From IMG/VR virus record IMGVR_UViG_3300032675_000001, positions 296,684 through 360,683 of that record: a DNA stretch of 64,000 nucleotides. One strand, written 5' to 3'. The notes below the pieces were generated by a model. The model made no database searches, was not told the origin of the DNA, and worked only from the letters and a program-made list of their open reading frames with translations. Both the position numbers and the translations under genes were made by a program. This document shows positions 1 through 50,221 of this stretch, one piece after another. Position 1 is the first letter of the stretch; every line of letters starts with the position of its first letter.

Positions 1-268
1 CATGACCAGTCAACGAACGGTCAATCAATCTGGAAAGCAAGTCGGAAAGTTCTTCCCATGGATTTTCAGCATTGATAATACCAGCAGATTCCGGAATCTG
101 CTTGATGCCGAAAGTAAGAAATGGATTATAGCAAGTGCGGATTCCATAAAGAAAACGCTGGGAAATTTCATTTCCAAGAATAGCGGCTTCATGCGCCTGC
201 CTGATCACATCTTCCTTGTGAAGGCGCGAATCGCTTTCATTCAGTTTCTTGAGCCAAGATGCAGACAC
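1..268 (-). CDS. lig: ATP-dependent DNA ligase, N-terminal part (runs off window)
   Basis: Not in ORF track. Manual translation from GTG at 268 after SD AGGAG: MSASWLKKLNESDSRLHKE...CYNPFLTFGIK...LIDRSLTGH, matching the T4 gp30-type ligase N-terminal pattern (YNP..TFG.K, L..R.LTG). Confidence 0.8.
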   Translation of the reverse strand, partial: MSASWLKKLNESDSRLHKEDVIRQAHEAAILGNEISQRFLYGIRTCYNPFLTFGIKQIPESAGIINAENPWEELSDLLSRLIDRSLTGH

Positions 269-291
269 GTAAAATCTCCTTAATATGCTTC

Positions 292-320
292 ACTATATAT
301 CAAAAAGATGTGCTTGTCAA
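292..320 (-). promoter_or_regulatory. sigma70-type early promoter
   Basis: TTGACA-N17-TATAGT upstream of ligase. Confidence 0.8.
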
Positions 321-526
321 TCTTGTTTGAGCAGCATCCATGTATATTCCTGTTCGGATATCCAAAAATCATCCGGCCAAGTTACGTCAGGGTAATCTCT
401 TAAGCGATATCCCCATTTAAACCACAGGGACTTTCCACTGCGTCCACACTTTCTTGGGAATAGAGAGAAATGCCGATCCCATTGCTGTTTGGGTTTATAA
501 ATATCATCACCAGAATAGAATGCCAT
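317..526 (-). CDS. hypothetical protein (69 aa), last gene of small-ORF array
   Basis: ATG at 526 overlaps TAA of upstream gene and follows GAGGTG SD. Confidence 0.75.
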   Translation of the reverse strand: MAFYSGDDIYKPKQQWDRHFSLFPRKCGRSGKSLWFKWGYRLRDYPDVTWPDDFWISEQEYTWMLLKQD

Positions 527-762
527 TACGACCACCTCAATAAAAATATCACAGCATCTTGTTCGGTGAAGAAACTGATTTCTTGCCAATCACAAATGCC
601 ATGGGAACCTCTTTTTGACAAATAAGACCTTGGATACTCTTGCTGCCACCGCGCCATAATGTCCTGAACAGTACTCATTGTCTTAAACTTATTGATTAAG
701 TTAAGCATTGCGTTCTGCGCTGCGCCTGCCTTCGCCATATTTACGTTAAGTGTGTAACTCAT
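526..762 (-). CDS. LRWS-family small protein
   Basis: C-terminus ISFFTEQDAVIFLLRWS; ATGA overlap at start. Confidence 0.8.
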   Translation of the reverse strand: MSYTLNVNMAKAGAAQNAMLNLINKFKTMSTVQDIMARWQQEYPRSYLSKRGSHGICDWQEISFFTEQDAVIFLLRWS

Positions 763-968
763 GACCAACTCAGGGTGACAAAGGTAGCAAGAGGATTCTC
801 GGTGTCATAGATTTCAACATATCCACCGAAATGCCCATTATTTACAGATTCAGAACGTGTTGTACAGCCGTTCTGCCACGTATTAGGACCCGAAGGACCA
901 AGTGATCTAGTCATAAGGTCGCTAATCTCTTTATACATCATTTTCGTATCTTTAAAATACAGTCTCAT
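759..968 (-). CDS. LRWS-family small protein
   Basis: C-terminus ATFVTLSWS; SD GAGGTG before ATG 968. Confidence 0.8.
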   Translation of the reverse strand: MRLYFKDTKMMYKEISDLMTRSLGPSGPNTWQNGCTTRSESVNNGHFGGYVEIYDTENPLATFVTLSWS

Positions 969-983
969 GACCACCTCAAAAAA

Positions 984-1190
984 CTATGAATGTAGCAGTG
1001 TTAAATATACCCAAGCTTTATCTGCTTCCTTAAAGGTACTATATGTTTTTGTAAAAAGCAAGGGAGAAGATATGATGTATGAAGTTGCAGCAGCATTCCA
1101 TTGGAACTTGGCCCCGCGTCCTCTACGCCGTTTAACCCTCTTCATCATAGTAAGTTTAGGATTGGACCTAATTACAGTTATCTTTTCCAT
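984..1190 (-). CDS. small protein in LRWS array (divergent member)
   Basis: TAATG overlap start; ends KAWVYLTLLHS. Confidence 0.7.
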   Translation of the reverse strand: MEKITVIRSNPKLTMMKRVKRRRGRGAKFQWNAAATSYIISSPLLFTKTYSTFKEADKAWVYLTLLHS

Positions 1191-1399
1191 TACGACCACC
1201 TCAACGCAAACCAAACAGCGTCCTCATCATCCACAAATTGCACAAACTTACCCTTCCAGCTTGGTCCGGGATAAAATCTATCCTTACAGTTTGGCCAACA
1301 CCAGTCTATTACTTCTTTCCTATCATGATGATTAAAATGCACATCGTGAAGTATTGGAACCTGAAGACCAAACTGTCCAATTGTTTTACAGGTAATCAT
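1190..1399 (-). CDS. LRWS-family small protein
   Basis: EVIDWC...FVQFVDDEDAVWFALRWS. Confidence 0.8.
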   Translation of the reverse strand: MITCKTIGQFGLQVPILHDVHFNHHDRKEVIDWCWPNCKDRFYPGPSWKGKFVQFVDDEDAVWFALRWS

Positions 1400-1605
1400 G
1401 TCCACCTCAACAGAAACCAAGCCAAATCACGATAGTTAATGAAACGAATGGAGAACAACCCATCGTCCCAAATGAACATATTGTTCTGTCTACACCACTT
1501 CTTAGCAGCATTTAGTGTATCTTGAACTTCTGACCAACGTTCCTCACCGAGATTATATTTCAGTTCTAGCCTATAAGGCTTACTATGTTCATGAACCCAT
1601 TTCAT
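1396..1605 (-). CDS. LRWS-family small protein
   Basis: AKKWC...IRFINYRDLAWFLLRWT. Confidence 0.8.
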   Translation of the reverse strand: MKWVHEHSKPYRLELKYNLGEERWSEVQDTLNAAKKWCRQNNMFIWDDGLFSIRFINYRDLAWFLLRWT

Positions 1606-1832
1606 GACCACCTCAAAACAAATAAAGTCATCTTGGATTCATCAGTAATATCAAGAAACCATCTGCGGGCTTTGCTGTCCCAATAAAGACGCCAACCAGT
1701 TCCACAACTGTCACACCAAAGTTCACCTGCATCAGCCGAAATGAGTGGTCCAACATTGTCATTTAACCATTCGTCAATGACACGAGACGGCATATCGGTG
1801 ATTACTGGGTAACTTGAAACATCTAAGATCAT
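1602..1832 (-). CDS. LRWS-family small protein
   Basis: IDEWL...DITDESKMTLFVLRWS. Confidence 0.8.
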   Translation of the reverse strand: MILDVSSYPVITDMPSRVIDEWLNDNVGPLISADAGELWCDSCGTGWRLYWDSKARRWFLDITDESKMTLFVLRWS

Positions 1833-2065
1833 GACCACATCATCCTAAAAAGCAATGCAACATTTTCGTCAGGTACTTCCACCCAACCATAAGTTTTTGA
1901 AGGAACCTCACAGTTATATCGCTCAGCCCATTCAAGAATCTCTTCTTTATTAGCAGCATAAAACTTTTCGTCAACCCAAAAAAAGGTTTTAACTGAAGGT
2001 TGGTAGGTGAAGCGAACACCCTGTTCCTTCAGTGTCCAGAGGCTCAGTGTCCAGAGGCAAGTCAT
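1829..2065 (-). CDS. LRWS-family small protein
   Basis: ILEWAE...VPDENVALLFRMMWS. Confidence 0.8.
   Translation of the reverse strand: MTCLWTLSLWTLKEQGVRFTYQPSVKTFFWVDEKFYAANKEEILEWAERYNCEVPSKTYGWVEVPDENVALLFRMMWS
2029..2058. repeat. perfect 15-bp tandem duplication (in frame)
   Basis: tcagtgtccagaggc x2, encoding CLWTL-SLWTL. Confidence 0.9.
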
Positions 2066-2268
2066 AGATACTTCAACGAAAAGGCTACATACCTTTTCTC
2101 ATCAATGATTTCAAACTGACGGTTTGCCCAGTCTACAAGACACAGACCAGCAGCAGGAACAATAACTTTGTTGATATACATATTACTGATACCAATACTT
2201 TTCCATTCATACCCGTTGTCAAACAACCATTTCATCAGATTGTTAAATGCCCACTCTGACATGTACAT
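2062..2268 (-). CDS. LRWS/LKY-family small protein
   Basis: LMKWLF...EIIDEKRYVAFSLKYL; ATGA coupling to next gene. Confidence 0.75.
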   Translation of the reverse strand: MYMSEWAFNNLMKWLFDNGYEWKSIGISNMYINKVIVPAAGLCLVDWANRQFEIIDEKRYVAFSLKYL

Positions 2269-2271
2269 GAG

Positions 2272-2463
2272 TCACCGCTGACGAAGCTTTTCGGTATCAC
2301 GGATGAACGAATGTGCCCAAAAGAAAAACAGTAAGAGATTCAACGCAATAGACCAGAAATGTGGGTGATTGTAATTATATGCGAGACTACTACTTGTAAT
2401 CAACAGGAACACGGCGTCCCAGATTACACACAGCCATGCGAAAAACTTTTGCCTATTAGTCAT
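2272..2463 (-). CDS. small 2-TM membrane protein
   Basis: two hydrophobic segments; gene-dense minus-strand run. Confidence 0.7.
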   Translation of the reverse strand: MTNRQKFFAWLCVIWDAVFLLITSSSLAYNYNHPHFWSIALNLLLFFFWAHSFIRDTEKLRQR

Positions 2464-2466
2464 TTT

Positions 2467-2694
2467 CTAATCTTTCAGTATAGTAAAGAGATCACCATAC
2501 TCGTATTCTAACACAACGCTATCCCTAAGTCTATAGTAGATTCGTCTGCGGTAGATTTTTTTGAGCCAAGTATATTTGTTCTCAACTTTAACGGGGAACC
2601 AAGCAAAATGATTTGCCCATTCGCCGCACGTCCTTTCACCAAATCCCCCATTACAAAAGTCTTTGATGATTGCTTCCCGTGCCCCGAAGATCAC
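2467..2694 (-). CDS. hypothetical protein
   Basis: HFAWFPVKV...WLKKIYRR, loosely similar to ORF 317-526 (HFSLFPRK..LWFKWGYR). Confidence 0.7.
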   Translation of the reverse strand: MIFGAREAIIKDFCNGGFGERTCGEWANHFAWFPVKVENKYTWLKKIYRRRIYYRLRDSVVLEYEYGDLFTILKD

Positions 2695-2697
2695 CGA

Positions 2698-2856
2698 TTA
2701 GTCTCCGCAAATCTGCTTAATCTCAGTCGCACTGCGATTGGATTGGGCATACGATTGCAGACAATCACTCTTGACATGTTCGGTATATCCGAGCGAACCA
2801 AACATTACCAAGAAGATGACCGCAATCGCAATCGCATACCATTTGAAATCGTCCAT
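2698..2856 (-). CDS. small membrane-anchored protein (52 aa)
   Basis: below ORF cutoff; MDDFKWYAIAIAVIFLVMFG...C...C fills the gap exactly. Confidence 0.65.
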   Translation of the reverse strand: MDDFKWYAIAIAVIFLVMFGSLGYTEHVKSDCLQSYAQSNRSATEIKQICGD

Positions 2857-2857
2857 T

Positions 2858-3505
2858 TTAAATCACCCTTACATAGTAAAGTTGAGTGGAATCTTCGCGG
2901 TGAGCCTTGACCTTACCCTCAATGTTCATGGTAGTGCCAGTGGCGACAAGACGCTTGAATCTGAAAAACACCGACTCGTTATCGGGAGTGATTCCAGTGA
3001 TGAAAAACGTGTCCCATGGTTGAGAATGGTTACAGCGAAGTACTTCAATCTCCAGTTGCACCTTGTCGCCAACTTGACCAATGTGACCATTAGCATCACG
3101 CAGCCGACGATTGATTGCAGCCTTTTTTTCATTGCGAAGATAGCAAGAAGGAAGCGAAGAAATAAACCCGACTTCAAACAGACCAACATCTTCGCTGTTG
3201 GCATATGCCATAGCTTTAGATTCAAACTCAGAGAGAACGCCGCCCTGCAAAATCTTGAAAGTAAGAGCCTGAAAATGACGAATGACATGCTCAGCCATTT
3301 CACAATCTTCATCACGGATGTCAAACTTTCCGTCGATAAAGTCGCGAGTCAGATACTTATTGGCAATACGCTTCTGATCACCATGTTCGTCATATTCACC
3401 CTGCTTGAGATATTCACCATTCACGCGGTGAGCAGCACATGCTGCATCAAACACTTTACGAGTGTTGAAGCGAATGGAAGCACCCGAAACACGAGAATAA
3501 GCCAT
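2858..3505 (-). CDS. hypothetical protein with probable C-terminal OB-fold
   Basis: G.VGDKV.LEIEV...IEGKVKAH..TQL pattern; SD AAGGA and own sigma70-like promoter at 3537-3565. Confidence 0.6.
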   Translation of the reverse strand: MAYSRVSGASIRFNTRKVFDAACAAHRVNGEYLKQGEYDEHGDQKRIANKYLTRDFIDGKFDIRDEDCEMAEHVIRHFQALTFKILQGGVLSEFESKAMAYANSEDVGLFEVGFISSLPSCYLRNEKKAAINRRLRDANGHIGQVGDKVQLEIEVLRCNHSQPWDTFFITGITPDNESVFFRFKRLVATGTTMNIEGKVKAHREDSTQLYYVRVI

Positions 3506-3571
3506 TTTGAAATCCTTTGTTAGAATCTATGGGTGGTATATAGACTAACACAAAACCTATGTCAACAGCTT

Positions 3572-4513
3572 TTATTCGGAGCCGTAACAATTATTTACTC
3601 CGGGTTCTCCGCCAATCAAGTCACCCAATGTCTGATTCCACTTTATGATACTGTCAGTATCATGAAACCTAGACCTCAACTCTTTTCTAACTTTTCTAAA
3701 ATCAAACCAGTCTTCTCTGCCAGTAATAGTAGTTTCCCAGCCAAAACTTTTGTGACGAAGTTCAAGGTTTCCGAATCCCATGTTTTCTAACATTCTTTTT
3801 TTGAGATATCGTATTTTTAAATTATCCCCATCAATATTATCTGGGTCCTCTTCATGAACTTTTATATGCTCTTTAATGAAGAAGATGTTGGATTCAAGGC
3901 TATGGCTTAGCATATTGCCTATGCCAGAAATGCCATTTTCTTGCATGAAAATGTCATAGAAGCAATATTCATGCCGAAGGGGGCTGTAAACTTTCCTACC
4001 TATATTAAGCTGTGGCCAAGTATAATCTCCGCCAATAACTGGACATGAAACACATTGTCCCAACAACCACATATGGGCAGCAACATGCGGCATGGTCAAT
4101 TTATAGGGTTCCATGTATTTTATGTGATCGCCGTTTCCAAAGAAGCTTTCTACATCTAAATCTATCAAAACATGCTTGATTTGGTTTTCTCTGCAAAACT
4201 TTTCTGCATAGTATAGATCATGCGTATTAAAGGGACTTTGTTTATATATAAGCCTCAGTGTCATTGCAACTACTGGGATTTTATTTTGTAAACATGATAT
4301 CAGTGAACATTCACTATCCAATCCTCCGCTGTATAAGATTTCTGCTGGAACATTTTTTCCATAAAAATGTTCAGCCATTGCGGATTGAACGGAATCAAAA
4401 TTTGAAATTTCGGTATCTGAAATTTCAGTAGTAAAGATGTTACGTTCAGGGCCGAACTCCATCGTATGTTTACGGTAGTTGTTCAGCCCTGAATGCCAAG
4501 TTTTTGCAGTCAT
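3572..4513 (-). CDS. PP-loop (asparagine synthase/adenine nucleotide alpha-hydrolase-like) protein
   Basis: YSGGLDSEC PP-loop motif; TAAATA 4 nt before ATG 4513. Confidence 0.6.
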   Translation of the reverse strand: MTAKTWHSGLNNYRKHTMEFGPERNIFTTEISDTEISNFDSVQSAMAEHFYGKNVPAEILYSGGLDSECSLISCLQNKIPVVAMTLRLIYKQSPFNTHDLYYAEKFCRENQIKHVLIDLDVESFFGNGDHIKYMEPYKLTMPHVAAHMWLLGQCVSCPVIGGDYTWPQLNIGRKVYSPLRHEYCFYDIFMQENGISGIGNMLSHSLESNIFFIKEHIKVHEEDPDNIDGDNLKIRYLKKRMLENMGFGNLELRHKSFGWETTITGREDWFDFRKVRKELRSRFHDTDSIIKWNQTLGDLIGGEPGVNNCYGSE

Positions 4514-4520
4514 CAAGTAT

Positions 4521-4820
4521 TTAACTGTTTTTGACGAGGTTCTTTACAATATCGTATTCTTCTGCTGCCTTTTTGAGAGCAGGATATTCTTCTTCAAGAG
4601 TTTTGCGATCAGTTTTCTTGTGTACTCGCTGGATTTCGCCATCTACAACTTCAAGCGAATAATCATAACCATTGAGACGATTAAGACAACGTTGGTAGCT
4701 GTTGGCTTGCGCTTTGTACATAGCAGCAAGAATTGGACTCTTTTCCTTTTCCTCGACTTTAGCCATTTCTCGCAGAAGTTCGATTTCTGCCTTCATTGCA
4801 TCTTCAATAGTGTAAGGCAT
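4521..4820 (-). CDS. hypothetical protein
   Basis: ORF with SD GAGGT. Confidence 0.7.
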   Translation of the reverse strand: MPYTIEDAMKAEIELLREMAKVEEKEKSPILAAMYKAQANSYQRCLNRLNGYDYSLEVVDGEIQRVHKKTDRKTLEEEYPALKKAAEEYDIVKNLVKNS

Positions 4821-14501: not shown

Positions 14502-14789
14502 TCACATTTCCTCTACTACTGGCTCATCACCCAGTCCATAAGTCACTCTGTATTCCTTTCCGTTGTGGTTATAGAAATACGTATGAGTTCGTTGATTGTT
14601 AGAATCCCCGTAATGTCCTATTAGCTTAAGAACTGTGAGCATGTGCTTTGCTTCGTCACCTTCAAGTTCTCGCGTTTCATGACCATGAATCTGACGTAGC
14701 CATTCACGTAGCTTTTCCGGAGGCCATTTCATTCTTTCTTCGGTCTGTTTACGAATAACTTCAATGATGCGCCTATTTCTTTCGCTCAT
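14502..14789 (-). CDS. hypothetical protein
   Basis: ORF. Confidence 0.7.
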   Translation of the reverse strand: MSERNRRIIEVIRKQTEERMKWPPEKLREWLRQIHGHETRELEGDEAKHMLTVLKLIGHYGDSNNQRTHTYFYNHNGKEYRVTYGLGDEPVVEEM

Positions 14790-15051
14790 TATTATTCCTT
14801 ACATAATACATTGCCATGACTAACCAGATAGTAGTCATTCCAGCAAGAGTGGCACCTGCAAACAATGAGAACCATTGATGCAGATGCCAGTAGAAATATA
14901 CGTTCCAGAATCCCCAAACAGCCCAAAAGAAGCTTGAAGGCCAAAATGTTCCCTTTACTGTTTTGTGCTTCCGAAGCGTAAAGATATTGATAGTTGCCGC
15001 TACCGCACCAAACGCTTCAAAGCTGCCATTGATTAAATCTGGTATGTTCAT
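14773..15051 (-). CDS. 3-TM PQ-loop/SemiSWEET-like membrane protein
   Basis: three TM helices, K..KG.....W..W..Y pattern. Confidence 0.55.
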   Translation of the reverse strand: MNIPDLINGSFEAFGAVAATINIFTLRKHKTVKGTFWPSSFFWAVWGFWNVYFYWHLHQWFSLFAGATLAGMTTIWLVMAMYYVRNNNERKK

Positions 15052-15281
15052 AAGTACTTCAATTTAAACCACAATTCATCTGCTTCTGCACGGAATTTCA
15101 AGCGATACTTGAAACACATTGAGACGGGATCGTATGCTTCTTCTAAGCCGTAATTGCCCGGAAAATGCTTCTGCGTTTCATTCAATACATACTGATACCG
15201 GTGAACTTCCTCGGCCTCAGTCAACCAGTTAACAGGACCGAGCTTATTCAGAAGTTCCTCAGGAGTCACGATAAATTCCAC
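15048..15281 (-). CDS. LKY/LRWS-family-like protein
   Basis: ends LKFRAEADELWFKLKYL with ATGA coupling; GTG start inferred. Confidence 0.6.
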   Translation of the reverse strand: MEFIVTPEELLNKLGPVNWLTEAEEVHRYQYVLNETQKHFPGNYGLEEAYDPVSMCFKYRLKFRAEADELWFKLKYL

Positions 15282-15289
15282 AATTATTT

Positions 15290-16360
15290 TTATGTAAATA
15301 CGCGATTGAACTGATTGTTGACACGAATGAATGTGGTGCATTTACTTAAGTGCTTAAGCTCGGCGGCACCGGTATAAGTACACGCGCTTCTTAGTCCGCC
15401 AAGAATGTCACGAATAGTATTTTCAACTGGTCCCTTGTATGGAATCTCTACAGTTCTGCCTTCGCTGCTACGATAGTCAGCAACTCCGCCATGATGTTTG
15501 TTCATGGCAGTTTCACTGCTCATCCCATAGAACTGCACACGGCGTTCACCCGTCAAGATAATATCAGCCTCATCACTATAATATCCAGTAGGCTTCCAAC
15601 GAGTAAACTGTGTGCCACCACCTTCATCATGACCGGCAAGCATTCCACCGAGCATTACGAAATCAGCACCTGCACCAAATGCCTTTGCTACATCGCCAGG
15701 ACAAGTACAACCGCCATCAGCAATAATATGACCTCCAAGACCGTGTGCTGCGTCTGCGCACTCGATAATTGCGGAAAGTTGTGGATAACCCACGCCAGTC
15801 TGGATACGAGTAGTACACACAGAACCGGGTCCAATACCCACCTTAATAATATCAGCGCCACGTAAAATTAACTCCTGAGTCATATCTGCGGTAACAACAT
15901 TGCCAGCAATGATAGTTTTATTGGGGTATAGTCCCCTAACCTTGGCAACAAAATCACCAAAATGTTCACTATACCCATTGGCAACATCAATACAGATAAA
16001 TTCAAACGGATACAGGGTCATCAAATCTTGAAGTTTTTGATAATCTGCATCACTTGTTCCTGTACTTACCGCAACATTACTAAAGTTGATATTCCCATCA
16101 TAAAGTTCAAAACCAGCAACATTGTAGCTTTTAACCAAGCAGGTAAACAAAGAGTTCTTGTTTAACTCTTCTGCCATAGCAAGGGTTCCAACCCCATCCA
16201 TGTTTGCCGCCATAATGGCAATCCCCCGCCATTCGGCACCGCTATGTTTGAACTTAAAATTTCGTTCTAAATTGACTTCCTTGCGACTAGAAAGAGTTGA
16301 CCGCTTTGGACGAATCAACACATCACTAAAGTCAAGAAGAATCTCATTTTCAATACGCAT
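15290..16360 (-). CDS. guaC: GMP reductase
   Basis: [17 protein letters not shown]; AANMDGVG; [10 protein letters not shown]; [11 protein letters not shown]; GGLRSACTY. Confidence 0.96.
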
Positions 16361-18274: not shown

Positions 18275-21028
18275 TTAACCAAAACTGAAAAGATCATTGA
18301 ACGTGCTATTGGTGTCCGTATCTAAACGAAGGTCCCATTTTAAAACGCCAAGAAGGTTTTCAACCTTTTCGTCAACCAGCTTGCGTTCCATATCCTTATC
18401 ATCAAACGGAAGGTCAAGGAACCATTGTGGAAGCCTCAACTCATCAGTTGGATAAGCGATAGATGTAAAACCAAGAGGATTGGTCTTAAGAGAACACACT
18501 ACCACTTTCATACCATCAACGATCTTCTGGCTATAGTTGTCCCCATGCATCTTGCGTAAATAGTTGTAGTTTATGGCTGCTCTAGCGTGACCAACTCCAC
18601 ACTTGCCAGTTTTTTCAAACTCAATCGTATGATTGGTCAAGTTATTGACTGATTTTGGATTTCCTTTAGTCCAACTATCTTGTTCCGATAAGTGATTCTT
18701 GAAATCCTTGATTTTTTCAATAACTTCATCACGCTGCTTACCTTGCTGGATAACCATACAAAGGACATCCATCAGAAACTCTTGAATATACTTTGGTGTG
18801 TCAGAACGCTTCAATGCAACGCCCATGGCCTTTACCTTACCATATCCAATGTTTACGCCCTTCTTTTTGGCTTCTTCTGGATCAGTGATCAGATCATAGC
18901 GATCACCTTCCATGTCAAAGATATTGATGGCATAAATCTTCTTAGTGATGAAAATAGCACGATCACCGATCAACTCGCGACCAGCCTTAATGACTGAACC
19001 GTTCTTGCGTGGACAGTGAAATACGCGTTCCATGAATGCAGGGAAACTATCATTAGTCTGCTCTGCGATGTTGTCATAGAGTGCAACACAAGTATCCTTA
19101 TTCCATTCTACCTCACCCCTATCAATCTGATCCTTTAGCATAGGGTATGCAGTGAAGTAGCAAGAGTCAGTATCGCCATATACGATTGAACTACCTTCAT
19201 GGGTGTAGTTACCCTCAATGAGTTCATTGATCTTACTCATCATGTGGCGAGTAATCTGTCGACCAGATAAAGTAACTGACTGACCAATACGTTTATCGTA
19301 GAAACGGCAGTGTTCATTCAAAAGTGCGCCATATGCAGAGTTGAGTAGAATCTTACGAACAAGCTGTCGCTTATCATAATACTCAAATAACACCATATCA
19401 CCAGAAGATTTTGCTTCTTTGGCTTGCTTCTGAGTTGCCTTACGTTCTGAATACCAACGAGAAAGCAGACCCGGAATGACACCTTCTTTCTCATATGTAA
19501 AGATGGTGCCATTTGCTGAAAGAATGTAGGGGTTATTGCTATCAAAAACCATCTTCCAGATTTCGGCAGCAGACATTTCTACTGATCGTCCATCTTCATA
19601 ATCAACAATCAGCATGGTGCCACGCTCTTGATTCATAATAGCCGTATATTCAAGCGAGCCAAAGAGACCATCCCAAAGTAGTGCAGCAGTTATGCCCTTA
19701 TCTTCACCCTTTTTAGTCTTTTTCTTTTTCTTGGAAATGGCAATGCTCTTTTCCTTCATATAATGATCGGTAAGAGTTTGACGAACCTGAGCAACGATTG
19801 TCTCTGGAGACATGTTTAGTGCACGAATGTCTGATGGATACAGTGAGTTGATGTCAACTGCGCCAACATATTCATGCATACCTACCTGAGGATTGGCAAC
19901 GAATGCACCTGCAGCCTGCGTAGTGTCATTGGTTTCCTGTTCTCGTGTTTTATCAGGAATGATGAATCCACGCTCATGTGCTTCATTGACAACAGCCATC
20001 TCAATCATGGCCACAGAACCCATTGCAGTAGGTAGCAGCACGGTATTTTCGTGAGCCAGAGCGTTTGCAAGATCAAGAAACTTCGTCTTACGGTGAATCT
20101 TCACCATAAGCATAGTATCCTGTCGGTTATATTCAATGAACTTCTTAAAGTCTTGGTTATACAGTTGGTCTAATGAACCCTCATACTGAGTCTTGCGTTC
20201 ATTTACTTCCATTTCGCCAATAGAATCAAGTGAATAACTGTGGCGAGATTCATAGTTATACTTCTTGTATAACTGCAAATAGTCCATGTGAATACGACCA
20301 ACCAAGTCATAGGTGGACTCTTCCTTACCAAAGCGTTCATATGTTCTTACCTTAGGAAGTTGCCCAAGAAGACAGAACTTTCGTGTGTCATCCTTGGACA
20401 TAATACGAGTCACACGATTCACACAGTATGGAATATCGTATCCCTCTGAGTTCCATCCAGTGAGAACATCGGCATCTTCAATCAGTTCAAAGAATGTCTC
20501 AAACATTTCAATCTCAGAACGAAAAAGAAACGTATTGGGAAAATCATTGACCAACTCTTGCGCCGTCTCATCGGACATATGCTTCGGTGGGATGGCAAGT
20601 GTAATCAGTTGATCCAACCAATCCAAATACAACGAAATAGCTGTAACTGGATTGAATGGATCATCCGTTGGACTAAAACCTCTTTCGGGGTCAAAGTCCA
20701 CTTCAATATCGAAGAAGCATGTATGGAGTTTTGGAGGCTCTACGTTAAGGTAGTTGTCCGCCAAGCAGCGGAACACAACGTTGACATCGCTTTCAAACAA
20801 CTTCTTATTGCTGTGAATGCGTTTTTCTTTCTGAAACTCAGTACGTTTACGTGTTGAGAATCTGGAAAGAGAATCACCGAAGATAGAACGATACTTGCCC
20901 TTGTGGTCAGGATAATAGAGAACATAGTTTGTTGGATATTCTCTATATACCCGATTGCCCTCAGGAGTTCTTTCTACAACGTGAATGCGATCATCTTTTA
21001 TTGACAATACGGCATCAACGTAGCTCAT
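18275..21028 (-). CDS. family B DNA polymerase (gp43-like)
   Basis: Exo I FFDIE, Exo II GWNS.GYDIP, Exo III YN.QD; DINSLYPS, K..LNSAYG, YGDTDS. Confidence 0.97.
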   Translation of the reverse strand: MSYVDAVLSIKDDRIHVVERTPEGNRVYREYPTNYVLYYPDHKGKYRSIFGDSLSRFSTRKRTEFQKEKRIHSNKKLFESDVNVVFRCLADNYLNVEPPKLHTCFFDIEVDFDPERGFSPTDDPFNPVTAISLYLDWLDQLITLAIPPKHMSDETAQELVNDFPNTFLFRSEIEMFETFFELIEDADVLTGWNSEGYDIPYCVNRVTRIMSKDDTRKFCLLGQLPKVRTYERFGKEESTYDLVGRIHMDYLQLYKKYNYESRHSYSLDSIGEMEVNERKTQYEGSLDQLYNQDFKKFIEYNRQDTMLMVKIHRKTKFLDLANALAHENTVLLPTAMGSVAMIEMAVVNEAHERGFIIPDKTREQETNDTTQAAGAFVANPQVGMHEYVGAVDINSLYPSDIRALNMSPETIVAQVRQTLTDHYMKEKSIAISKKKKKTKKGEDKGITAALLWDGLFGSLEYTAIMNQERGTMLIVDYEDGRSVEMSAAEIWKMVFDSNNPYILSANGTIFTYEKEGVIPGLLSRWYSERKATQKQAKEAKSSGDMVLFEYYDKRQLVRKILLNSAYGALLNEHCRFYDKRIGQSVTLSGRQITRHMMSKINELIEGNYTHEGSSIVYGDTDSCYFTAYPMLKDQIDRGEVEWNKDTCVALYDNIAEQTNDSFPAFMERVFHCPRKNGSVIKAGRELIGDRAIFITKKIYAINIFDMEGDRYDLITDPEEAKKKGVNIGYGKVKAMGVALKRSDTPKYIQEFLMDVLCMVIQQGKQRDEVIEKIKDFKNHLSEQDSWTKGNPKSVNNLTNHTIEFEKTGKCGVGHARAAINYNYLRKMHGDNYSQKIVDGMKVVVCSLKTNPLGFTSIAYPTDELRLPQWFLDLPFDDKDMERKLVDEKVENLLGVLKWDLRLDTDTNSTFNDLFSFG

Positions 21029-21654
21029 TTTTTACTCTTACAATTATGGCCATGCCAGCGAATATAGTTACTATTTCCTTTTCCGATTTTACCACAGTAC
21101 TCACATTCCCATTCCTGATTTTTATATTGTTTAGGTTGTTTACTTGCGGTGCAGTTCTGACCGTGCCAGCGTTTTAGATTAGCAATATCAGATTCTATAC
21201 CACAGTTAAAGCAAGTTGCTCTTTTTCGGTTAAGAGCAGCTTTTCTGTTTTTAGCTCTGGTCTCCAGTGATCTTTTCTTTCCCGTTTGTATTTCAGACAT
21301 TTTTTTGGCAATACGTGGGTTTCGCATTGGGTTTTTGTCTCCGAGAAGATCAGGGCGTGGCCCTCCCTTCAGAAAATGGTGACTCCCATCAGCTATACGC
21401 CGTAAAGCATGATTTTTACTCAGCAGAGATATCTCTCCCGGTGTTTTTCCCATTCTTAGTGCTAAAAGAATACATGCGGCCCAATCACCTTGGCGATGAT
21501 GTATGTCATAATGTTCCTGTATCGAAATACACATGAGATTGCTAATTTTGTTGTTTAATTTGTTTCCATCTATATGATGAATATCATATGATCTACCATC
21601 TTTATCTTTTGGTATTGGACCATAATAAGATTCCCATAACTTTCTGTAGTTCAT
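21025..21654 (-). CDS. HNH homing endonuclease
   Basis: DIHHIDGN..NN...NL......H...H; C-terminal C..CG...RWH..NC zinc repeats; ATGA-coupled to polymerase. Confidence 0.9.
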   Translation of the reverse strand: MNYRKLWESYYGPIPKDKDGRSYDIHHIDGNKLNNKISNLMCISIQEHYDIHHRQGDWAACILLALRMGKTPGEISLLSKNHALRRIADGSHHFLKGGPRPDLLGDKNPMRNPRIAKKMSEIQTGKKRSLETRAKNRKAALNRKRATCFNCGIESDIANLKRWHGQNCTASKQPKQYKNQEWECEYCGKIGKGNSNYIRWHGHNCKSKK

Positions 21655-24004: not shown

Positions 24005-24481
24005 TTAGAAGCGAACAGAAGTCGTAGCAACTACGCCGTTGTTCTTGACACCGCCAAGATCAGTATGAGCATACTGAACACCAACTGAGAATGGTCCTAC
24101 AACATTCAAATCAACGCCCCCAGTTGCACGAAGCCCCTGAAGATTGTGTGCATGAAGATCGCGTAGGTTATCATAACCAAGACCAGCATATACAAGAGTA
24201 TAACCAGTCACTTCATAACCAAGACGAGCGCCAACATTGACATCGCGACGATCAAACACGTTGTCAAGGCCAGTTTCCAAACCAGCAGTGATCGGACCAA
24301 CAACCTTGGTGTCGTAACCGAGTTCAACACCATAAGTGAAGTCACGATTTGACGGAATGTTTGAGATGTCCTGATAACCAACTTCACCAGTTACGCGAGG
24401 ACCAACAAAGCTATCTGCCATTGCTGGAGCGGCAGTTGCGGCGGATACAGCCAATAGTGCTGCTGTGATTAACTTCTTCAT
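24005..24481 (-). CDS. 8-stranded outer-membrane beta-barrel protein
   Basis: signal peptide A-x-A, alternating beta strands, C-terminal VRF (BAM signal). Confidence 0.85.
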   Translation of the reverse strand: MKKLITAALLAVSAATAAPAMADSFVGPRVTGEVGYQDISNIPSNRDFTYGVELGYDTKVVGPITAGLETGLDNVFDRRDVNVGARLGYEVTGYTLVYAGLGYDNLRDLHAHNLQGLRATGGVDLNVVGPFSVGVQYAHTDLGGVKNNGVVATTSVRF

Positions 24482-24573
24482 ATTTTTCCTTTTTCTGTTT
24501 GAGGATTATTTCTCTAATCCAGTATCCTATATAGCATCAGATACATGAAATATCAAGCATTTTGGTCCACAAG

Positions 24574-26631
24574 TTATTTTGATGTTGCCCTGTACACCCC
24601 ATCCCAATCTCTAGGTTTTGGTGGATTCTGTTGTATCTCTTTGATCCTATCTTGCATCATTAAGTAATAAGATTTCAGTACGCCGTTCCAGTTATTTTCC
24701 ATAGCCTGTGCAAAACCCAATGCTCTGTTCCAAGCACCCATTCTATATGCATCCATGAATCGTTGATGTGCTAGTTGCGCTTTTGCGTCCTTGTGCTCCA
24801 ACACCGTATAGATTCTGGAAGGTTCTGTTTTGCCCTTGACTGCGATAAGATCAAGTTCAACGACCTGATACTTGTCTTTCACGTATTCTGCGGTTTTGGG
24901 ACCAATAATGATTTTAACCCCGTAAGGCTTGCTTTGACCTTCCAGCCTACTTGCGAGATTAACGCCATCACCCAGACAAGTATAATCAAACCGCTGGTCG
25001 CTGCCCATATTGCCGACAACAACAGTATCAGTATTAATACCGAGACCCATTCCAAAAGCTGGTACGCCTTCTTTTTTGACTTCATTGTTAAATTCCTCCA
25101 ATGCTTTCAACATCTGAAACGCTGTTTTTACTGCATCCAATGCGTGTTTCTCATTGTTTACAGGTGCGTTCCAGAATGCCATTTGAGCATCACCTATATA
25201 CTTATCAAGCGTACCTTTGTTCTCAAGAATTGCTTTGGTCATCGCTGTCATGTAGCGATTCATAATCTTGGTCAATCCTTGAACGTCCTTGCCATAATGT
25301 TCTGAGATTGTAGTGAAACCACGAACATCCGTGAACATGATGGACAGTTCTTGCTCAGTGCCTCCTAGCTGTAATAGTTCTGGTTGACGCTGTAGTTGTG
25401 CAACAAGATCAGGACTCAAATAAGTTCCAAACTGCTTCTTGATCTGCTGCTTTTGTAGAAACTCATTGATGAATTTTACACTGTAAACATGCAAATAAAT
25501 AATGAGAGCAGACAAGAAGTTGAATGAAATATCAAACAATATCTTATTATGACTATATAGATATACAGGAGTATAAGCATATCCGATCAGTAATATTCCA
25601 ATCCAAACAATGGAATATCTTAGATTAGACAAGCCTATAACTGCTAGTGAAAGAAGCACAAATGCCAGAAGATCAACCAGCCCAACCCAATTCGGAATTG
25701 ACACAGAATCCTGATTTATCAGAGTCTGAAGAATGCTGGCCTGAACCTGATGGGGCATTTTGGCACCAGCCGGAGTCGCTACTGGGTTTGCGATCCCGCT
25801 CGCAGTCACACCGAGTAGAACGATCTTTCCATCGAGACGAGGAATATTCTCGCCTACTTCAAACGATGAGAATTCGGAATTCGGATTAATAAACACACGA
25901 CCATATTCATCTGTAGGAATTTTACCAAACTGTGGAACACGAACAGCCTCAACACCAGTCTCATTTATTTTCGCTTGATAGCTTGGATCACCAGCAGCGA
26001 CACGCAACAGTTCTAAGGCGAACGAAGGGTAGTATTCGCCATTTGAAGTCCCTAATAAAGGCATTCGGCGCACAACCCCATCCGTCTCGGGAAGAGTTGT
26101 TGTTATGCCGACACCTACAGCGGATTGTTGAAGAACTGGAATGTTATCAAGAACACAAGGATAGTTCGGAAGAAACTGAGTTGGTTTCCCGTCACCGATT
26201 ACAGCAACACCTGTGCGGCGAGTCTGACGATTATCCCTAGTGCAATCGGTTGAAAGTGTTTGGCTAAGCACTACAGGGTGATTTGCTAACGCATTTGCAA
26301 AGGCATCATCACCATTGAATCTATCTTTTTCCGGATAGAGAATGGTGCTTCCAACAAGACCAGCATGACCATTATCGTAAATGTCATTGATAATCTTGGC
26401 ATAAGTGTCTCTAGGGAATGGATATTGTCCGTATTTTTCTATTGCTTTCTCGCCAATATTTGCAATGACGATTTGATCAGAATGTACAGGCTTGCCTAGC
26501 ATAAGATAATCATAAAACTTAAGCTTCATCGCATCAACTAGATACGGATTGGAAAGCTTGACGATAAGAAGTAATGTTAAAGTGAAAAGAGCCATCCAAG
26601 GACTCAATAGGATTTTTCGTAGTTTTTTCAT
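24574..26631 (-). CDS. CHASE2-domain class III adenylate cyclase
   Basis: N-term TM; CHASE2 (G.YPFPR, DGVVRR.P); 3 TM; MFTDVRGFT, DKYIGDA, GDGVNLASRLE; Lys/Thr-type ATP specificity. Confidence 0.93.
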   Translation of the reverse strand: MKKLRKILLSPWMALFTLTLLLIVKLSNPYLVDAMKLKFYDYLMLGKPVHSDQIVIANIGEKAIEKYGQYPFPRDTYAKIINDIYDNGHAGLVGSTILYPEKDRFNGDDAFANALANHPVVLSQTLSTDCTRDNRQTRRTGVAVIGDGKPTQFLPNYPCVLDNIPVLQQSAVGVGITTTLPETDGVVRRMPLLGTSNGEYYPSFALELLRVAAGDPSYQAKINETGVEAVRVPQFGKIPTDEYGRVFINPNSEFSSFEVGENIPRLDGKIVLLGVTASGIANPVATPAGAKMPHQVQASILQTLINQDSVSIPNWVGLVDLLAFVLLSLAVIGLSNLRYSIVWIGILLIGYAYTPVYLYSHNKILFDISFNFLSALIIYLHVYSVKFINEFLQKQQIKKQFGTYLSPDLVAQLQRQPELLQLGGTEQELSIMFTDVRGFTTISEHYGKDVQGLTKIMNRYMTAMTKAILENKGTLDKYIGDAQMAFWNAPVNNEKHALDAVKTAFQMLKALEEFNNEVKKEGVPAFGMGLGINTDTVVVGNMGSDQRFDYTCLGDGVNLASRLEGQSKPYGVKIIIGPKTAEYVKDKYQVVELDLIAVKGKTEPSRIYTVLEHKDAKAQLAHQRFMDAYRMGAWNRALGFAQAMENNWNGVLKSYYLMMQDRIKEIQQNPPKPRDWDGVYRATSK

Positions 26632-26641
26632 GGCTCTATCC

Positions 26642-28974: not shown

Positions 28975-29749
28975 TGTTACCGGTACTCGTTATGTTGATT
29001 ACTGTTTCAGAAGCACCATACTGTTGAGTAGTAAGAGTGTTACCTGTTCCAGTAAAGCTGGCATATAGAGAGTGACCATATGTTCCACCGGCATCAGTTT
29101 GTGTCACGTTAGTAGTATTGTTGCTACCAGTGAACAATAATGTTTGTGACGAGTTAGGCGAGTTATCAGTTACAGTAAATGCGTTATTGTTGCCATTGGT
29201 GTTGATTGTTTGCGTAATATTTGCAGCAGACCCATGAAAATTCAATGAGTTGTTGTTACCATCAAATACAACATTAAGATTCAACTTATTACAGTTTGAA
29301 TCGCCCTGCTGTGTGCCACATGCAATGACAGCAGTATTATTATTACCAATCTGTTGAATAGTAGCAGTTGCGCCACTACCTGTTCCAGTAGAACCTACAA
29401 TACCCATTAGTAATGAGTTTGAATTGCCAGTTTGAATAACTGTAACAGTTTGATTGTCACCAGAAAGATAAATTGGATTTACCAAAGTACCTGTAATGTT
29501 AGATACACCTGTTTGTTGGATATTTACATTTACGTTATTACCTGACTGATCAATGTATACTTTATTTGTTGTTGCTACTGTGCCTGCTTCTGTTGCATTG
29601 GGTGAAGTTGCTACGATTGCAGGAGGATTTGGTGCAGTAGGAAGTACCGCAGTTGCTGGAGTGCCAGCATCAACTGATGCTGTTTGTGCAAACGCAGCAC
29701 TAGATACTAGCAACGAACCAAGAATTAATGCATATTTTATTATTTTCAT
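28943..29749 (-). CDS. curlin-like (CsgA/CsgB-type) repeat protein
   Basis: signal peptide; many ~22-aa N/Q/G/T-rich repeats (I.Q.G..N). Confidence 0.75.
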   Translation of the reverse strand: MKIIKYALILGSLLVSSAAFAQTASVDAGTPATAVLPTAPNPPAIVATSPNATEAGTVATTNKVYIDQSGNNVNVNIQQTGVSNITGTLVNPIYLSGDNQTVTVIQTGNSNSLLMGIVGSTGTGSGATATIQQIGNNNTAVIACGTQQGDSNCNKLNLNVVFDGNNNSLNFHGSAANITQTINTNGNNNAFTVTDNSPNSSQTLLFTGSNNTTNVTQTDAGGTYGHSLYASFTGTGNTLTTQQYGASETVINITSTGNNGTFNIKTGH

Positions 29750-29760
29750 CTTTGTAATCC

Positions 29761-30588: not shown

Positions 30589-30599
30589 GTCAAGGCTCC

Positions 30600-35816: not shown

Positions 35817-35843
35817 TGAGGTATTTATCAAACTTTAGGATTG

Positions 35844-40447: not shown

Positions 40448-40451
40448 GTGA

Positions 40452-49386: not shown

Positions 49387-49397
49387 TTTTAAATCCT

Positions 49398-50186: not shown

Positions 50187-50221
50187 TTTCATATCCTAAC
50201 ACACTGGGAGTTGAATGTCAA
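50161..50221 (-). promoter_or_regulatory. sigma70 promoter overlapping a perfect 15-bp inverted repeat around the dnaJ start
   Basis: TTGACA-N17-TAGGAT; arms 50161-50175 and 50197-50211. Confidence 0.75.

What the first reader, a model, noticed from the sequence alone, without database searches (positions are those of the whole stretch)
317..2268. Cassette-like array of ~70-aa paralogues joined by a conserved triple-function 15-mer (TTGAGGTGGTCATGA)
Seen: nine back-to-back ORFs of 207-237 nt (four exactly 210 nt). Their bodies are highly divergent, but most share W-centred helices and a C-terminal (F/I)..E..A..F.LRW(S/T) or LKYL. The conserved protein end is encoded by TTG AGG TGG TC(A/G) TGA/TAA, which also holds the Shine-Dalgarno (GAGGTG) and overlaps the next ATG. 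Copies or variants lie at ~526, 759, 965, 1190, 1396, 1602 and 1829. Inference: each gene carries its downstream neighbour's RBS, so units are self-assembling, expression-ready modules that can be shuffled, added or lost by recombination at the junction. This resembles an integron-like diversifying array of small effectors (e.g. anti-defence or host-takeover proteins) with no integrase in view.
Basis: partly seen in the sequence, partly recalled or inferred. Interest (0 to 1): 0.8.

Follow-up and report, generated by a model that had tools for sequence, protein, structure and literature searches.

The report
Recombining coupled small-gene array in phage
A freshwater jumbo phage carries a run of nine tiny back-to-back genes in which the last four codons of each gene also form the ribosome-binding site and start of the next gene; comparison with related phages shows whole genes added, lost or swapped exactly at these joints, so the array looks like an enzyme-free gene-shuffling platform for an uncharacterised protein family.

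Summary
The genes lie on the minus strand. Nine ORFs of 207-237 nt sit at 317-2268, and seven copies of the TTGAGGTGGTCATGA-like 15-mer lie at their joints.

Six ORFs (P2, P5-P9) belong to a large unannotated phage protein family: 344 clusters at 50% identity, with no Pfam, PHROG or NCBIfam model. It has a confident beta-beta-beta-alpha-beta-beta-alpha fold and ends in ...F.LRW+1 residue. P1, P3 and P4 share only the tail, or nothing.

The 15-mer has several roles. The LRW tail is kept at protein level even where no downstream gene is coupled. The codons TTG-AGG-TGG are kept because they spell a Shine-Dalgarno site 5 nt before an ATGA stop/start overlap. AGG makes up 19 of 20 Arg codons at that position against 5% genome-wide.

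The closest relative (DNA polymerase 94% identical) has the same cassettes in the same order, with four whole-cassette insertions or replacements. Every breakpoint lies inside a junction. An unrelated pair of 98%-identical phages shows the same pattern. One cassette (P5) is 88% identical to a cassette in a 512-kb phage that shares no other array DNA.

"Integron-like" is only an analogy: there is no integrase and no attC. The closest known parallel is PeSL-mediated shuffling in T4-type phages. Protein function remains unknown.

The parts
317..526 (-). P1, 69 aa, last gene of the array. It ends ...WMLLKQD with no LRW tail and no downstream coupled gene. It is a paralogue of N11 (2467-2694), not of the LRW family.
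   Evidence: (blastp against N11, 9e-5); orthologue T16 in L141 is 88% identical with dN/dS 0.23
526..762 (-). P2, 78 aa, LRW-tail family member. It ends FLLRWS, and its stop TAA overlaps the ATG of P1 (TAATG).
   Evidence: E 1e-11; orthologue T12 in L141 is 96% identical at protein level and 97% at nucleotide level
759..968 (-). P3, 69 aa. It ends FVTLSWS with an ATGA overlap onto P2. Orthologues occur in all four syntenic arrays. Only the last 13 residues resemble the family.
984..1190 (-). P4, 68 aa, basic (pI 10.8). It has a degenerate tail ...AWVYLTLLHS and stops 15 nt before the P3 start. The tail resembles L008 Q10 and L141 T13. P4 is absent from the closest relative.
1190..1399 (-). 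P5, 69 aa, the best family member. It ends FALRWS with a TAATG overlap. The AF2 model has pLDDT 89.8. P5 is absent from the closest relative but 88% identical at nucleotide level to cassette Q8 of a 512-kb phage contig.
1396..1605 (-). P6, 69 aa, family member. It ends FLLRWT with an ATGA overlap.
   Evidence: orthologue T7 is 93% identical with dN/dS 0.09
1602..1832 (-). P7, 76 aa, family member. It ends FVLRWS with an ATGA overlap.
1829..2065 (-). P8, 78 aa, family member. It ends FRMMWS with an ATGA overlap. It carries a 15-nt tandem duplication at 2029-2058.
2062..2268 (-). P9, 68 aa, family member of the ...FSLKYL tail variant (TTGAAGTATCTATGA) with an ATGA overlap.
   Evidence: (E 1e-4)
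526..540 (-). Junction P2|P1: TTGAGGTGGTCGTAA(TG).
759..773 (-). Junction P3|P2: CTGAGTTGGTCATGA. It is the breakpoint of the T11 insertion/deletion relative to L141.
965..979 (-). An exact 15-mer lying in the 15-nt spacer after the P4 stop. Here it acts only as the ribosome-binding site and start of P3 and does not encode a protein tail.
1190..1204 (-). Junction P5|P4: TTGAGGTGGTCGTAA(TG).
1396..1410 (-). Junction P6|P5: TTGAGGTGGACATGA. It is the breakpoint of the replacement of P5+P4 by T8+T9.
1602..1616 (-). Junction P7|P6, an exact 15-mer. A metagenome contig from another study diverges exactly here.
1829..1843 (-). Junction P8|P7: ATGATGTGGTCATGA. It is the breakpoint of the T5 insertion/deletion relative to L141.
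292..320 (-). Sigma-70-like promoter (TTGACA, 17 nt, TATAGT; 11 of 12 matches) immediately after the P1 stop and ahead of the DNA ligase gene. It marks the 3' end of the array's transcription unit.
   Evidence: ligase identified from relatives
2272..3505 (-). Tightly packed upstream genes on the same strand: a 215-aa conserved anchor (2858-3505), N12 (2698-2856, transmembrane), N11 (2467-2694, P1 paralogue) and N10 (2272-2463, transmembrane). They are probably in the same operon as the array.
15048..15341 (-). A probable solitary family member. It ends ...ELWFKLKYL, with an ATGA overlap onto a membrane-protein gene (14773-15051).
   Evidence: E 0.008

Best explanation
The region is a polycistronic, translationally coupled array of small genes in a hyperplastic region of a roughly 360-kb freshwater jumbo phage. 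It lies between a conserved 215-aa gene and the DNA ligase gene. Most of the genes belong to one large uncharacterised phage protein family. This family has a 45-50 residue alpha/beta module (helix with ..I..WC..NC.., two strands, then helix ..DA..F.LRW) placed at the extreme C-terminus, under a variable N-terminal part.

In this low-GC phage lineage the tail L-R-W-x is written as TTG AGG TGG nnA TGA. The same letters give GAGGUGGUC, which can form nine consecutive pairs (one of them G-U) with the 3' end of 16S rRNA. They also give an AUG that overlaps the stop codon. A ribosome finishing one gene is therefore handed directly to the next.

Because every cassette ends in the same 10-35 nt, these joints also act as short homologies. 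Recombination or template switching at them deletes, inserts or replaces whole cassettes in frame, leaving the newcomer with a ready ribosome-binding site. This happens within a genome and between co-infecting phages.

Shown here: the gene structure, the family, the codon bias, the purifying selection, the breakpoints at junctions and the cassette-limited homology between genomes. Inferred: actual coupling of translation, the recombination enzyme or pathway (probably the phage's own homologous-recombination or replication machinery), and the role of the proteins. My best guess for the role is a stable scaffold with diversified surfaces that binds varied host or rival targets early in infection, such as host take-over or counter-defence. 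I put that part at about 0.3.
For: Structure and chance: seven of eight 15-mer hits lie at ORF ends inside 1.5 kb. Six of eight joints have 1- or 4-nt overlaps.

Real genes: dN/dS is 0.09-0.38 for seven orthologous pairs against the closest relative. The AF2 model of P5 has pLDDT 89.8.

Family: a profile finds 344 clusters at E<=1e-3 among 1.84 billion representatives. Nearly all are 55-110 aa with the domain at the C-terminus, and 51 of the top 150 end in LRWS. Among 120 IMG/VR loci found with the exact 15-mer, 104 hold at least one family ORF, 83 hold at least three, and 123 of 180 15-mers sit at the stop of a family ORF.

Dual constraint: AGG is 5.1% of Arg codons in the window's long genes but 19 of 20 at tail position -3 (binomial p 5e-24). 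Third-position information is high only in the last four codons. In IMG/VR arrays, after removing exact 15-mers, AGG is 160 of 217 when a downstream start overlaps and 11 of 36 when it does not (Fisher p 1e-6). Yet 60 of 106 uncoupled members keep L[RK]W. L008 Q11 encodes LRWS as CTA CGA TGG AGT. The cultured phage Phosso has about 10 members ending FKLRWS or FKLAWS, encoded CTC CGC TGG TCT with no overlap. The intergenic 15-mer at 965-979 keeps the ribosome-binding site without coding.

Recombination at joints: window against L141 (DNA polymerase 94% identical) gives the order P9, P8, [T5], P7, P6, [T8 T9 instead of P5 P4], P3, [T11], P2, [T13-15], P1, with homology switching inside the junction core. 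L086 and L091 (98% identical) differ by indels of 3 and 2 cassettes, with crossovers inside TTTATATTGAGGTGGTCATGA. Ten cassette-limited hits of at least 80% identity occur between otherwise unlike arrays.

Horizontal spread: P5 and L008 Q8 are 88% identical over 236 nt, bounded by the joints, and this is the only array DNA shared. dS is 0.33 for P5/Q8 and 0.10-0.64 for array cassettes, against 1.0-1.2 for the polymerase, exonuclease and methylase genes.
Against: There is no expression or ribosome data. No RNA run was found to hold the sequence.

Homology at the joints is very short, with a 10-15 nt identical core and up to about 35 nt of partial similarity. Classical homologous recombination would be inefficient there. 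The breakpoints could also be fixed by selection for in-frame, expressible products rather than by a preference of the recombination process.

All sampled copies of the window's own strain are identical across this region. Variation is therefore seen only between lineages, not as ongoing rearrangement.

Three of the nine ORFs are not demonstrable family members.

No functional clue exists. There is no match in PDB, Pfam, PHROGs, NCBIfam or PADLOC. pI ranges from 4.3 to 10.8. The host, and hence its anti-Shine-Dalgarno sequence, is unknown.
Confidence: 0.7

Rival explanations
1. This is ordinary tandem duplication followed by divergence. The junction is similar only because the copies share ancestry and each needs a ribosome-binding site. 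It plays no part in rearrangement, and differences between phages reflect differential loss and fast divergence.
For: The members are paralogues with a common tail. ATGA overlaps with varied Shine-Dalgarno sequences are common elsewhere in the window. The order of shared cassettes is collinear in all syntenic arrays.
Against: Neighbouring cassettes are unrelated while a shared one is 88-98% identical, and the homology stops within a few nucleotides of the joint. dS of array cassettes is 2-10 times lower than that of core genes in the same genome pair. Non-family genes such as T15, P3 and P1 sit inside arrays.
Confidence: 0.1
2. This is an integron-like system. A dedicated site-specific recombinase, encoded elsewhere in the 360-kb genome or by the host, recognises the 15-mer and inserts or excises cassettes.
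For: The boundaries are precise and in frame, a conserved sequence sits at every joint, and single cassettes are shared between genomes. Only 64 of about 360 kb was inspected.
Against: No tyrosine or serine recombinase was found in 30 large ORFs of the window or in the gene calls of eight flanking loci. There are no attC-like imperfect palindromes and no spacer between cassettes. The conserved letters are fully explained by the protein tail, the Shine-Dalgarno site and the start/stop overlap. The same protein family in Phosso lacks the 15-mer.
Confidence: 0.03
3. The cassettes are mainly selfish. A small ORF whose tail supplies a ribosome-binding site and a recombination handle spreads and persists in phage hyperplastic regions with little benefit to the phage.
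For: The family is very abundant and patchy, with up to 16 members per array. Turnover is rapid between close relatives. No recognisable function was found.
Against: Purifying selection acts on the proteins (dN/dS 0.09-0.38). The fold and core residues are conserved across hundreds of clusters. The family also persists in Phosso without the junction device.
Confidence: 0.15
4. The ORFs are not real genes, and the repeated motif belongs to a non-coding repeat or RNA element.
For: The ORFs are short and have no database annotation.
Against: dN/dS is below 0.4. The fold prediction is confident. There are hundreds of homologous clusters. Only the last four codons show third-position conservation. 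There is no Rfam match.
Confidence: 0.01

Closest known systems
PeSL (promoter-early stem-loop) cassettes that mediate modular shuffling in hyperplastic regions of T4-type phages (Arbiol et al. 2010, PMC2839356; Comeau et al. 2014, PMC4122927)
   Same: Both involve short conserved expression signals repeated between small, mostly unknown-function genes in variable regions flanked by core genes. In both, insertions, deletions and replacements between close relatives have breakpoints in the repeated signal, and the incoming gene arrives with its expression signal (PMC2839356 abstract).
   Different: Here the repeat is not a promoter plus terminator in an intergenic spacer. No such sites lie between cassettes. 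The repeat is a coding tail, a Shine-Dalgarno site and an overlapping stop/start, so it acts on translation rather than transcription. The shuffled genes mostly belong to one protein family. Minicircles were not tested.
Integron gene-cassette arrays
   Same: Both are head-to-tail arrays of small, apparently promoterless cassettes read in one direction. Content varies between relatives and single cassettes are shared between genomes.
   Different: There is no IntI and no attI or attC. Cassettes overlap instead of being separated by recombination sites. Boundaries are explained by short homology.
Translational coupling at overlapping stop/start codons (AUGA, UAAUG) with the Shine-Dalgarno site inside the upstream gene, as in the E. 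coli trp operon and many phage operons (textbook knowledge)
   Same: The geometry is the same. About 25 other overlapping gene pairs occur in this window.
   Different: The Shine-Dalgarno-bearing codons are the conserved signature of a protein family and are repeated almost letter for letter across hundreds of cassettes and many genomes. The other overlaps in the window use heterogeneous sequences.
Lineage-specific expansions of small proteins in jumbo phages, such as the roughly 35 zinc-ribbon copies in Bacillus phage G (Iyer et al. 2021, PMC7824862)
   Same: Both are many paralogous small proteins in a giant phage genome.
   Different: This family is not described there. It has no Pfam, PHROG or NCBIfam model. 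It is organised as coupled arrays with cassette turnover.

Membership tests
Integron | An IntI-type tyrosine recombinase gene next to the array | tested here: not met
   Pfam scans of 30 large ORFs of the window found none. Precomputed Pfam labels on the flanks of eight related loci show none. The rest of the roughly 360-kb genome was not seen.
Integron | attC recombination sites (imperfect inverted repeats) separating cassettes | tested here: not met
   Cassettes overlap by 1-4 nt. The repeat search finds only the direct junction repeats and no boundary-associated inverted repeats.
Integron | Promoterless cassettes expressed from a common upstream promoter | tested here: inconclusive
   There is no strong sigma-70-like site on the minus strand inside 317-2268. 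The best site (11 of 12 matches) lies just after the array. This is a consensus scan only, with no RNA data.
PeSL-type modular shuffling in T4-type hyperplastic regions | A sigma-70-like early promoter plus stem-loop terminator flanking each ORF | tested here: not met
   There are no intergenic spacers, and no promoter/terminator pairs between cassettes.
PeSL-type modular shuffling in T4-type hyperplastic regions | Indels and replacements between close relatives with breakpoints in the repeated motif | tested here: met
   Window against L141 has four sites. L086 against L091 has two sites.
PeSL-type modular shuffling in T4-type hyperplastic regions | A variable region bracketed by conserved core genes | tested here: met
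   The 215-aa gene and the DNA ligase bracket arrays of 9, 14, 5 and 6 cassettes in four lineages.
PeSL-type modular shuffling in T4-type hyperplastic regions | Excised minicircles | not testable with these tools
   This needs PCR or long reads from infected cells.
Translationally coupled overlapping genes | The stop codon overlaps the next start (ATGA or TAATG) | tested here: met
   Six of eight joints in the window show this, as do 462 of 568 family ORFs in IMG/VR arrays.
Translationally coupled overlapping genes | A Shine-Dalgarno site inside the upstream ORF at working distance, under selection | tested here: met
   GAGGTGGTC lies 5 nt before the ATG. AGG is 19 of 20 against a 5% background. 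AGG is 74% when coupled and 31% when uncoupled. Pairing to 16S rRNA is inferred from the conserved bacterial 3' end, and the host is unknown.
Translationally coupled overlapping genes | Downstream translation depends on upstream translation | not testable with these tools
   This needs reporter assays.
LRW-tail small-protein family (defined here) | A significant match to the family profile with the domain at the C-terminus | tested here: met
   P5 scores 2.5e-18, P2 1e-11, P6 7e-10, P7 5e-7, P8 1e-6 and P9 1e-4. This is not met for P1, P3 and P4 (E>0.1; profile-profile comparison aligns only the last 13 residues of P3 and nothing of P1).
LRW-tail small-protein family (defined here) | A shared fold among members | tested here: inconclusive
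   The P5 model is confident (pLDDT 89.8, beta-beta-beta-alpha-beta-beta-alpha). Its best structural neighbours are uncharacterised phage proteins, including one from Atu_ph07. The P3 model, built from three sequences, has pLDDT 65 with a compatible beta-alpha-beta-beta-(alpha) order but is unreliable.

The most novel reading that the evidence does not exclude
The LRW-tail family would be a self-propagating cassette system. Its conserved 3' end would have evolved as a portable plug that ends one protein, starts translation of the next, and gives co-infecting phages a short handle for swapping single genes in frame. In effect this would be an integrase-free counterpart of the integron, letting freshwater jumbo phages assemble changing sets of small target-binding proteins such as counter-defence or host take-over factors.
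Probability: 0.25. Interest if true: 0.8.

Novelty: new variant of a known kind. Interest (0 to 1): 0.6.

Why it matters
Hyperplastic regions full of tiny unknown genes are where phages keep much of their host-specific and counter-defence equipment, and how these regions turn over is poorly understood.

This array adds a second, translation-level version of the 'mobile regulatory cassette' idea known from T4-type phages. One 15-nt sequence is held in place by three overlapping needs: a protein tail, a ribosome-binding site and a stop/start overlap. The same sequence marks where whole genes are gained, lost and exchanged between phages.

The analysis also defines a large protein family with hundreds of clusters and arrays of up to 16 members. 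The family is common in lake phages, present in the cultured phage Phosso and probably in Atu_ph07 (structural match only), and has no model in Pfam, PHROGs or NCBIfam. The exact 15-mer is a practical search tag for such arrays in metagenomes.

Tried and rejected
- **Nucleotide search:** a search of the region against 50,697 phage records found nothing, and neither did a protein search with the QueC-like neighbour.
- **Family libraries:** Pfam, PHROGs and PADLOC on the nine proteins, and Pfam, PHROGs and NCBIfam on 114 family members, gave only chance-level hits.
- **Structure searches:** a PDB sequence profile search and Foldseek against PDB gave nothing significant. The best Foldseek hit was secretin N0/N1-like with TM 0.53 and E 0.5. 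The PDB profile hit, a DNA-entry nuclease inhibitor, had E 0.65.
- **ESM Atlas:** it returned only unnamed viral clusters.
- **tblastn in cultured phages:** family members found one weak Phosso hit and otherwise only self hits, because the family is too divergent.
- **Rfam:** no RNA family in 1-4600.
- **Literature:** text searches for the tail motif and for jumbo-phage paralogue arrays found nothing relevant.
- **Small genes beyond the ligase in L011:** they are not family members.
- **First neighbour-based count of cassette-limited sharing:** it found only one case because weak members were not counted as neighbours. It was replaced by a DNA-based test.
- **Metagenome contigs laid on the window:** they gave only weak hints of variants. 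One was a joint 546->1396 with a 24-nt side. The other was a loose end exactly at 1602.
- **Diversity-generating retroelement and attC ideas:** both were dropped. No template-like long repeats or inverted repeats were found.
Full report
**What is there.** The window is part of a roughly 360-kb uncultured jumbo phage (IMG/VR UViG_3300032675_000001) from lake-water metagenomes. Its family-B DNA polymerase is 45% identical to those of Agrobacterium phage Atu_ph07 and Sinorhizobium phage Phosso. It belongs to a very large freshwater clade with polymerases 75-94% identical.

The finding lies on the minus strand. With ATG starts there are nine ORFs of 207-237 nt, four of them exactly 210 nt: P1 317-526, P2 526-762, P3 759-968, P4 984-1190, P5 1190-1399, P6 1396-1605, P7 1602-1832, P8 1829-2065 and P9 2062-2268.

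Six of the eight internal joints are ATGA or TAATG stop/start overlaps. The 15-mer, with up to 2 mismatches, occurs seven times, always at an ORF boundary. The other 62 kb contain a single 3-mismatch hit. The array follows three tightly packed small genes and a conserved 215-aa gene. It is followed by a sigma-70-like promoter (11 of 12 matches) and the DNA ligase gene.

**Are they paralogues?** Pairwise similarity is confined to the last 17 residues or so. I built a profile from the C-terminal 50 residues of 36 cassettes, taken from the window and three related arrays. It found 344 clusters at 50% identity with E<=1e-3 among 1.84 billion representatives. Nearly all are proteins of 55-110 aa with the match at the extreme C-terminus.

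The consensus is ..I..WC..NC.G.W....F.F..E.DA..F.LRW followed by one residue, and 51 of the best 150 end in LRWS. With a 114-sequence alignment, P5 folds with mean pLDDT 89.8 as beta-beta-beta-alpha-beta-beta-alpha. Foldseek finds no significant solved structure. It does find uncharacterised proteins of uncultured phages and one from Atu_ph07. No Pfam, PHROG, NCBIfam, PADLOC or PDB sequence match exists.

Against the broad profile, P5, P2, P6, P7, P8 and P9 are members (E from 2.5e-18 to 1e-4). P3 and P4 match only in the tail. P1 is instead a paralogue of the upstream gene N11. A three-sequence model of P3 is too weak to judge its fold. A probable solitary member lies at 15048-15341.

**The 15-mer has several functions, and the constraints can be separated.** AGG makes up 5.1% of Arg codons in 16 long genes of the window. 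At tail position -3 it is 19 of 20 Arg codons across four arrays (p 5e-24), and TTG is 25 of 34 Leu codons against 23%. These copies are related, so the p-values overstate their independence.

Third-codon-position information is 1.3-1.6 bits in the TTG and AGG codons, about 1.0 and 0.7 bits in the next two, but only 0.2-0.5 bits in conserved codons upstream. Nucleotide-level constraint is therefore limited to about 15 nt.

In 568 family ORFs from 120 IMG/VR loci, 462 have an overlapping downstream start. After removing the ORFs that end in the exact 15-mer used to find the loci, Arg before Trp is AGG in 160 of 217 coupled tails and in 11 of 36 uncoupled tails (odds ratio 6.4, p 1e-6). Still, 60 of 106 uncoupled members end in L[RK]W+1.

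Three natural controls agree:
- L008 Q11 encodes LRWS as CTA CGA TGG AGT, where the next start lies elsewhere.
- Phosso has about ten members ending FKLRWS or FKLAWS, written CTC CGC TGG TCT TGA, with no overlap.
- At window 965-979 an exact 15-mer lies in a spacer after the stop of P4. There it encodes nothing and only precedes the ATG of P3.

The tail is thus a protein signature in its own right. In this lineage its codons have been fixed so that they also spell GAGGUGGUC 5 nt before the AUG. From the conserved bacterial 16S 3' end, this can form nine consecutive pairs with one G-U; this is an inference, since the host is unknown. The free last residue is almost always encoded nnA, which completes ATGA.

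All sampled copies of the window's own strain are identical here. I reached the closest different genome (L141, a 343,794-bp contig, polymerase 94% identical) by walking from the polymerase.

Between the same anchor genes L141 has 14 cassettes. In order they are P9, P8, T5, P7, P6, T8, T9, P3, T11, P2, T13, T14, T15 and P1. Shared cassettes are collinear and 83-97% identical in DNA. The differences are three whole-cassette insertions or deletions and one replacement (P5+P4 against T8+T9).

At all four sites the homology stops at a junction. At P8|P7 and P3|P2 the window sequence matches one L141 joint up to the core ..TGGTCATGA and another L141 joint from it onward. More distant syntenic arrays (L013 with 5 cassettes, L006 with 6) share only P3 and P8 orthologues.

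An independent pair of contigs that are 98% identical (L086 and L091) differ by deletions or insertions of three and two cassettes. The crossovers lie inside the 21-25 nt TTTATATTGAGGTGGTCATGA. A DNA-level screen found ten cases in which at least 80% identity covers one cassette and ends within a few nucleotides of its stop codon.

**Exchange between genomes.** P5, which L141 lacks, is 88% identical over 236 nt to cassette Q8 of a 16-member array in a 512-kb contig. That array sits in a different genomic context, between tail-fibre genes and a UDP-glucose dehydrogenase. P5/Q8 is the only nucleotide-level match between that 12-kb locus and the whole 64-kb window, and the match ends at both joints.

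The polymerase of that contig is not among the 120 best matches, all at least 75% identical, so the two genomes are distant; this is an inference. Synonymous divergence is 0.33 for P5/Q8 and 0.10-0.64 for window/L141 cassette pairs. It is 1.0-1.2 for the polymerase, exonuclease and methylase genes of the window/L141 pair. The array has therefore exchanged DNA more recently than the core genome. dN/dS of 0.09-0.38 shows that the cassettes are expressed proteins under purifying selection, though less strict than on core genes (0.02-0.06).

**Interpretation.** The best-supported model is a translationally coupled operon of small genes. Its conserved tail, ribosome-binding site and start joint also serve as the short homology at which recombination or template switching removes, adds or replaces whole cassettes in frame, both within and between phages.

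It does not support an integron-type mechanism:
- No integrase was found in 30 large ORFs of the window or in related flanks.
- No attC-like inverted repeats were found.
- Cassettes overlap rather than being spaced.
- No reordering was seen.

The closest known system is PeSL-mediated modular shuffling in T4-type phages (PMC2839356, PMC4122927). The difference is that the repeated signal here is translational and coding rather than a promoter-terminator pair, and the cassettes mostly belong to one family.

**Function.** This is unknown. The conserved residues are aromatic or hydrophobic core positions plus a helix cap, while the N-terminal parts and surface charge vary widely (pI 4.3-10.8). This fits a stable scaffold with diversified binding surfaces, and the turnover pattern fits accessory or conflict genes. 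That remains an inference, at about 0.3.

**Limits.** There are no expression data. The host is unknown. Only 64 of about 360 kb was inspected. Breakpoint concentration at joints could be sharpened by selection for in-frame products. The metagenome-contig hints of variants in another lake study are weak.

Noticed in passing
window 2029-2058 (-), inside P8: A perfect 15-nt tandem duplication (TCAGTGTCCAGAGGC twice) adds five residues (LWTLS/LWTLK) near the N-terminus of P8. The orthologues in L013 and L141 lack it.
   Followed up: partly
window 15048-15341 (-): A probable solitary member of the same family. It ends ...ELWFKLKYL with an ATGA overlap onto a membrane-protein gene (14773-15051), next to an IMPDH/GMP-reductase-like gene (15290-16360).
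   Followed up: partly
window 24005-31055 (-): The phage encodes a cluster of cell-envelope and signalling genes: CsgF (30600-31055), CsgG (29761-30588), a FecR-domain protein (27832-28974), a CHASE2-adenylate/guanylate cyclase (24574-26631) and an outer-membrane beta-barrel protein (24005-24481). The cluster is conserved in the closest relative L139. Curli-secretion homologues in a phage are unusual.
   Followed up: partly
window 3572-4516 (-): A QueC-like (weak Pfam hit) 314-aa gene upstream of the 215-aa anchor. It is present in the window and in L005/L006 but absent at the same place in L013 and L141, so it is another presence/absence difference in this variable region.
   Followed up: partly
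window 317-526 and 2467-2694 (-): P1 and N11 are paralogues of a different small family (W..HF..FP.K...W..Y.R...EYEY..LLK.D) and sit at or near the two ends of the LRW array (N10 lies between N11 and P9). N11 has weak hits to several PHROGs of unknown function.
   Followed up: partly
window 21025-21654 (-): An HNH endonuclease gene overlaps the start of the DNA polymerase gene by 4 nt. The closest relative L139 appears to have different small genes at that place, so this may be a mobile homing endonuclease.
   Followed up: no
window 47119-50192 (-): ClpB-like double-AAA chaperone (755 aa) and DnaJ (264 aa) genes lie side by side. Further along are an amidoligase-domain protein (33582-35831) and a tandem GGACT/AIG2 protein (38906-40531).
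   Followed up: no
L138 (Sinorhizobium phage Phosso) 2821-3189: A tRNA-Arg(CCT), which reads AGG, lies directly upstream of a family member in Phosso. The window itself has no tRNA genes.
   Followed up: no
window 1602, 1396-1420, 546 (run X17): In a freshwater metagenome from another study, one contig matches the window from 1602 onward and is preceded by 255 nt of unlike sequence. Another shows a weak joint 546->1396. Both end at junction 15-mers, hinting at array variants of this phage in nature.
   Followed up: partly
family members P0009-P0158; Pfam PF07068: Two family members and an ESM-Atlas neighbour cluster give weak hits to the Pfam Gp23 major-capsid model. The cause may be small-ORF contamination of that model's seed, or chance.
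   Followed up: no
P0013, P0018, P0023, P0065, P0148: Some database proteins of 140-180 aa contain two family domains in tandem. They look like two adjacent cassettes fused by loss of the stop at a joint.
   Followed up: no
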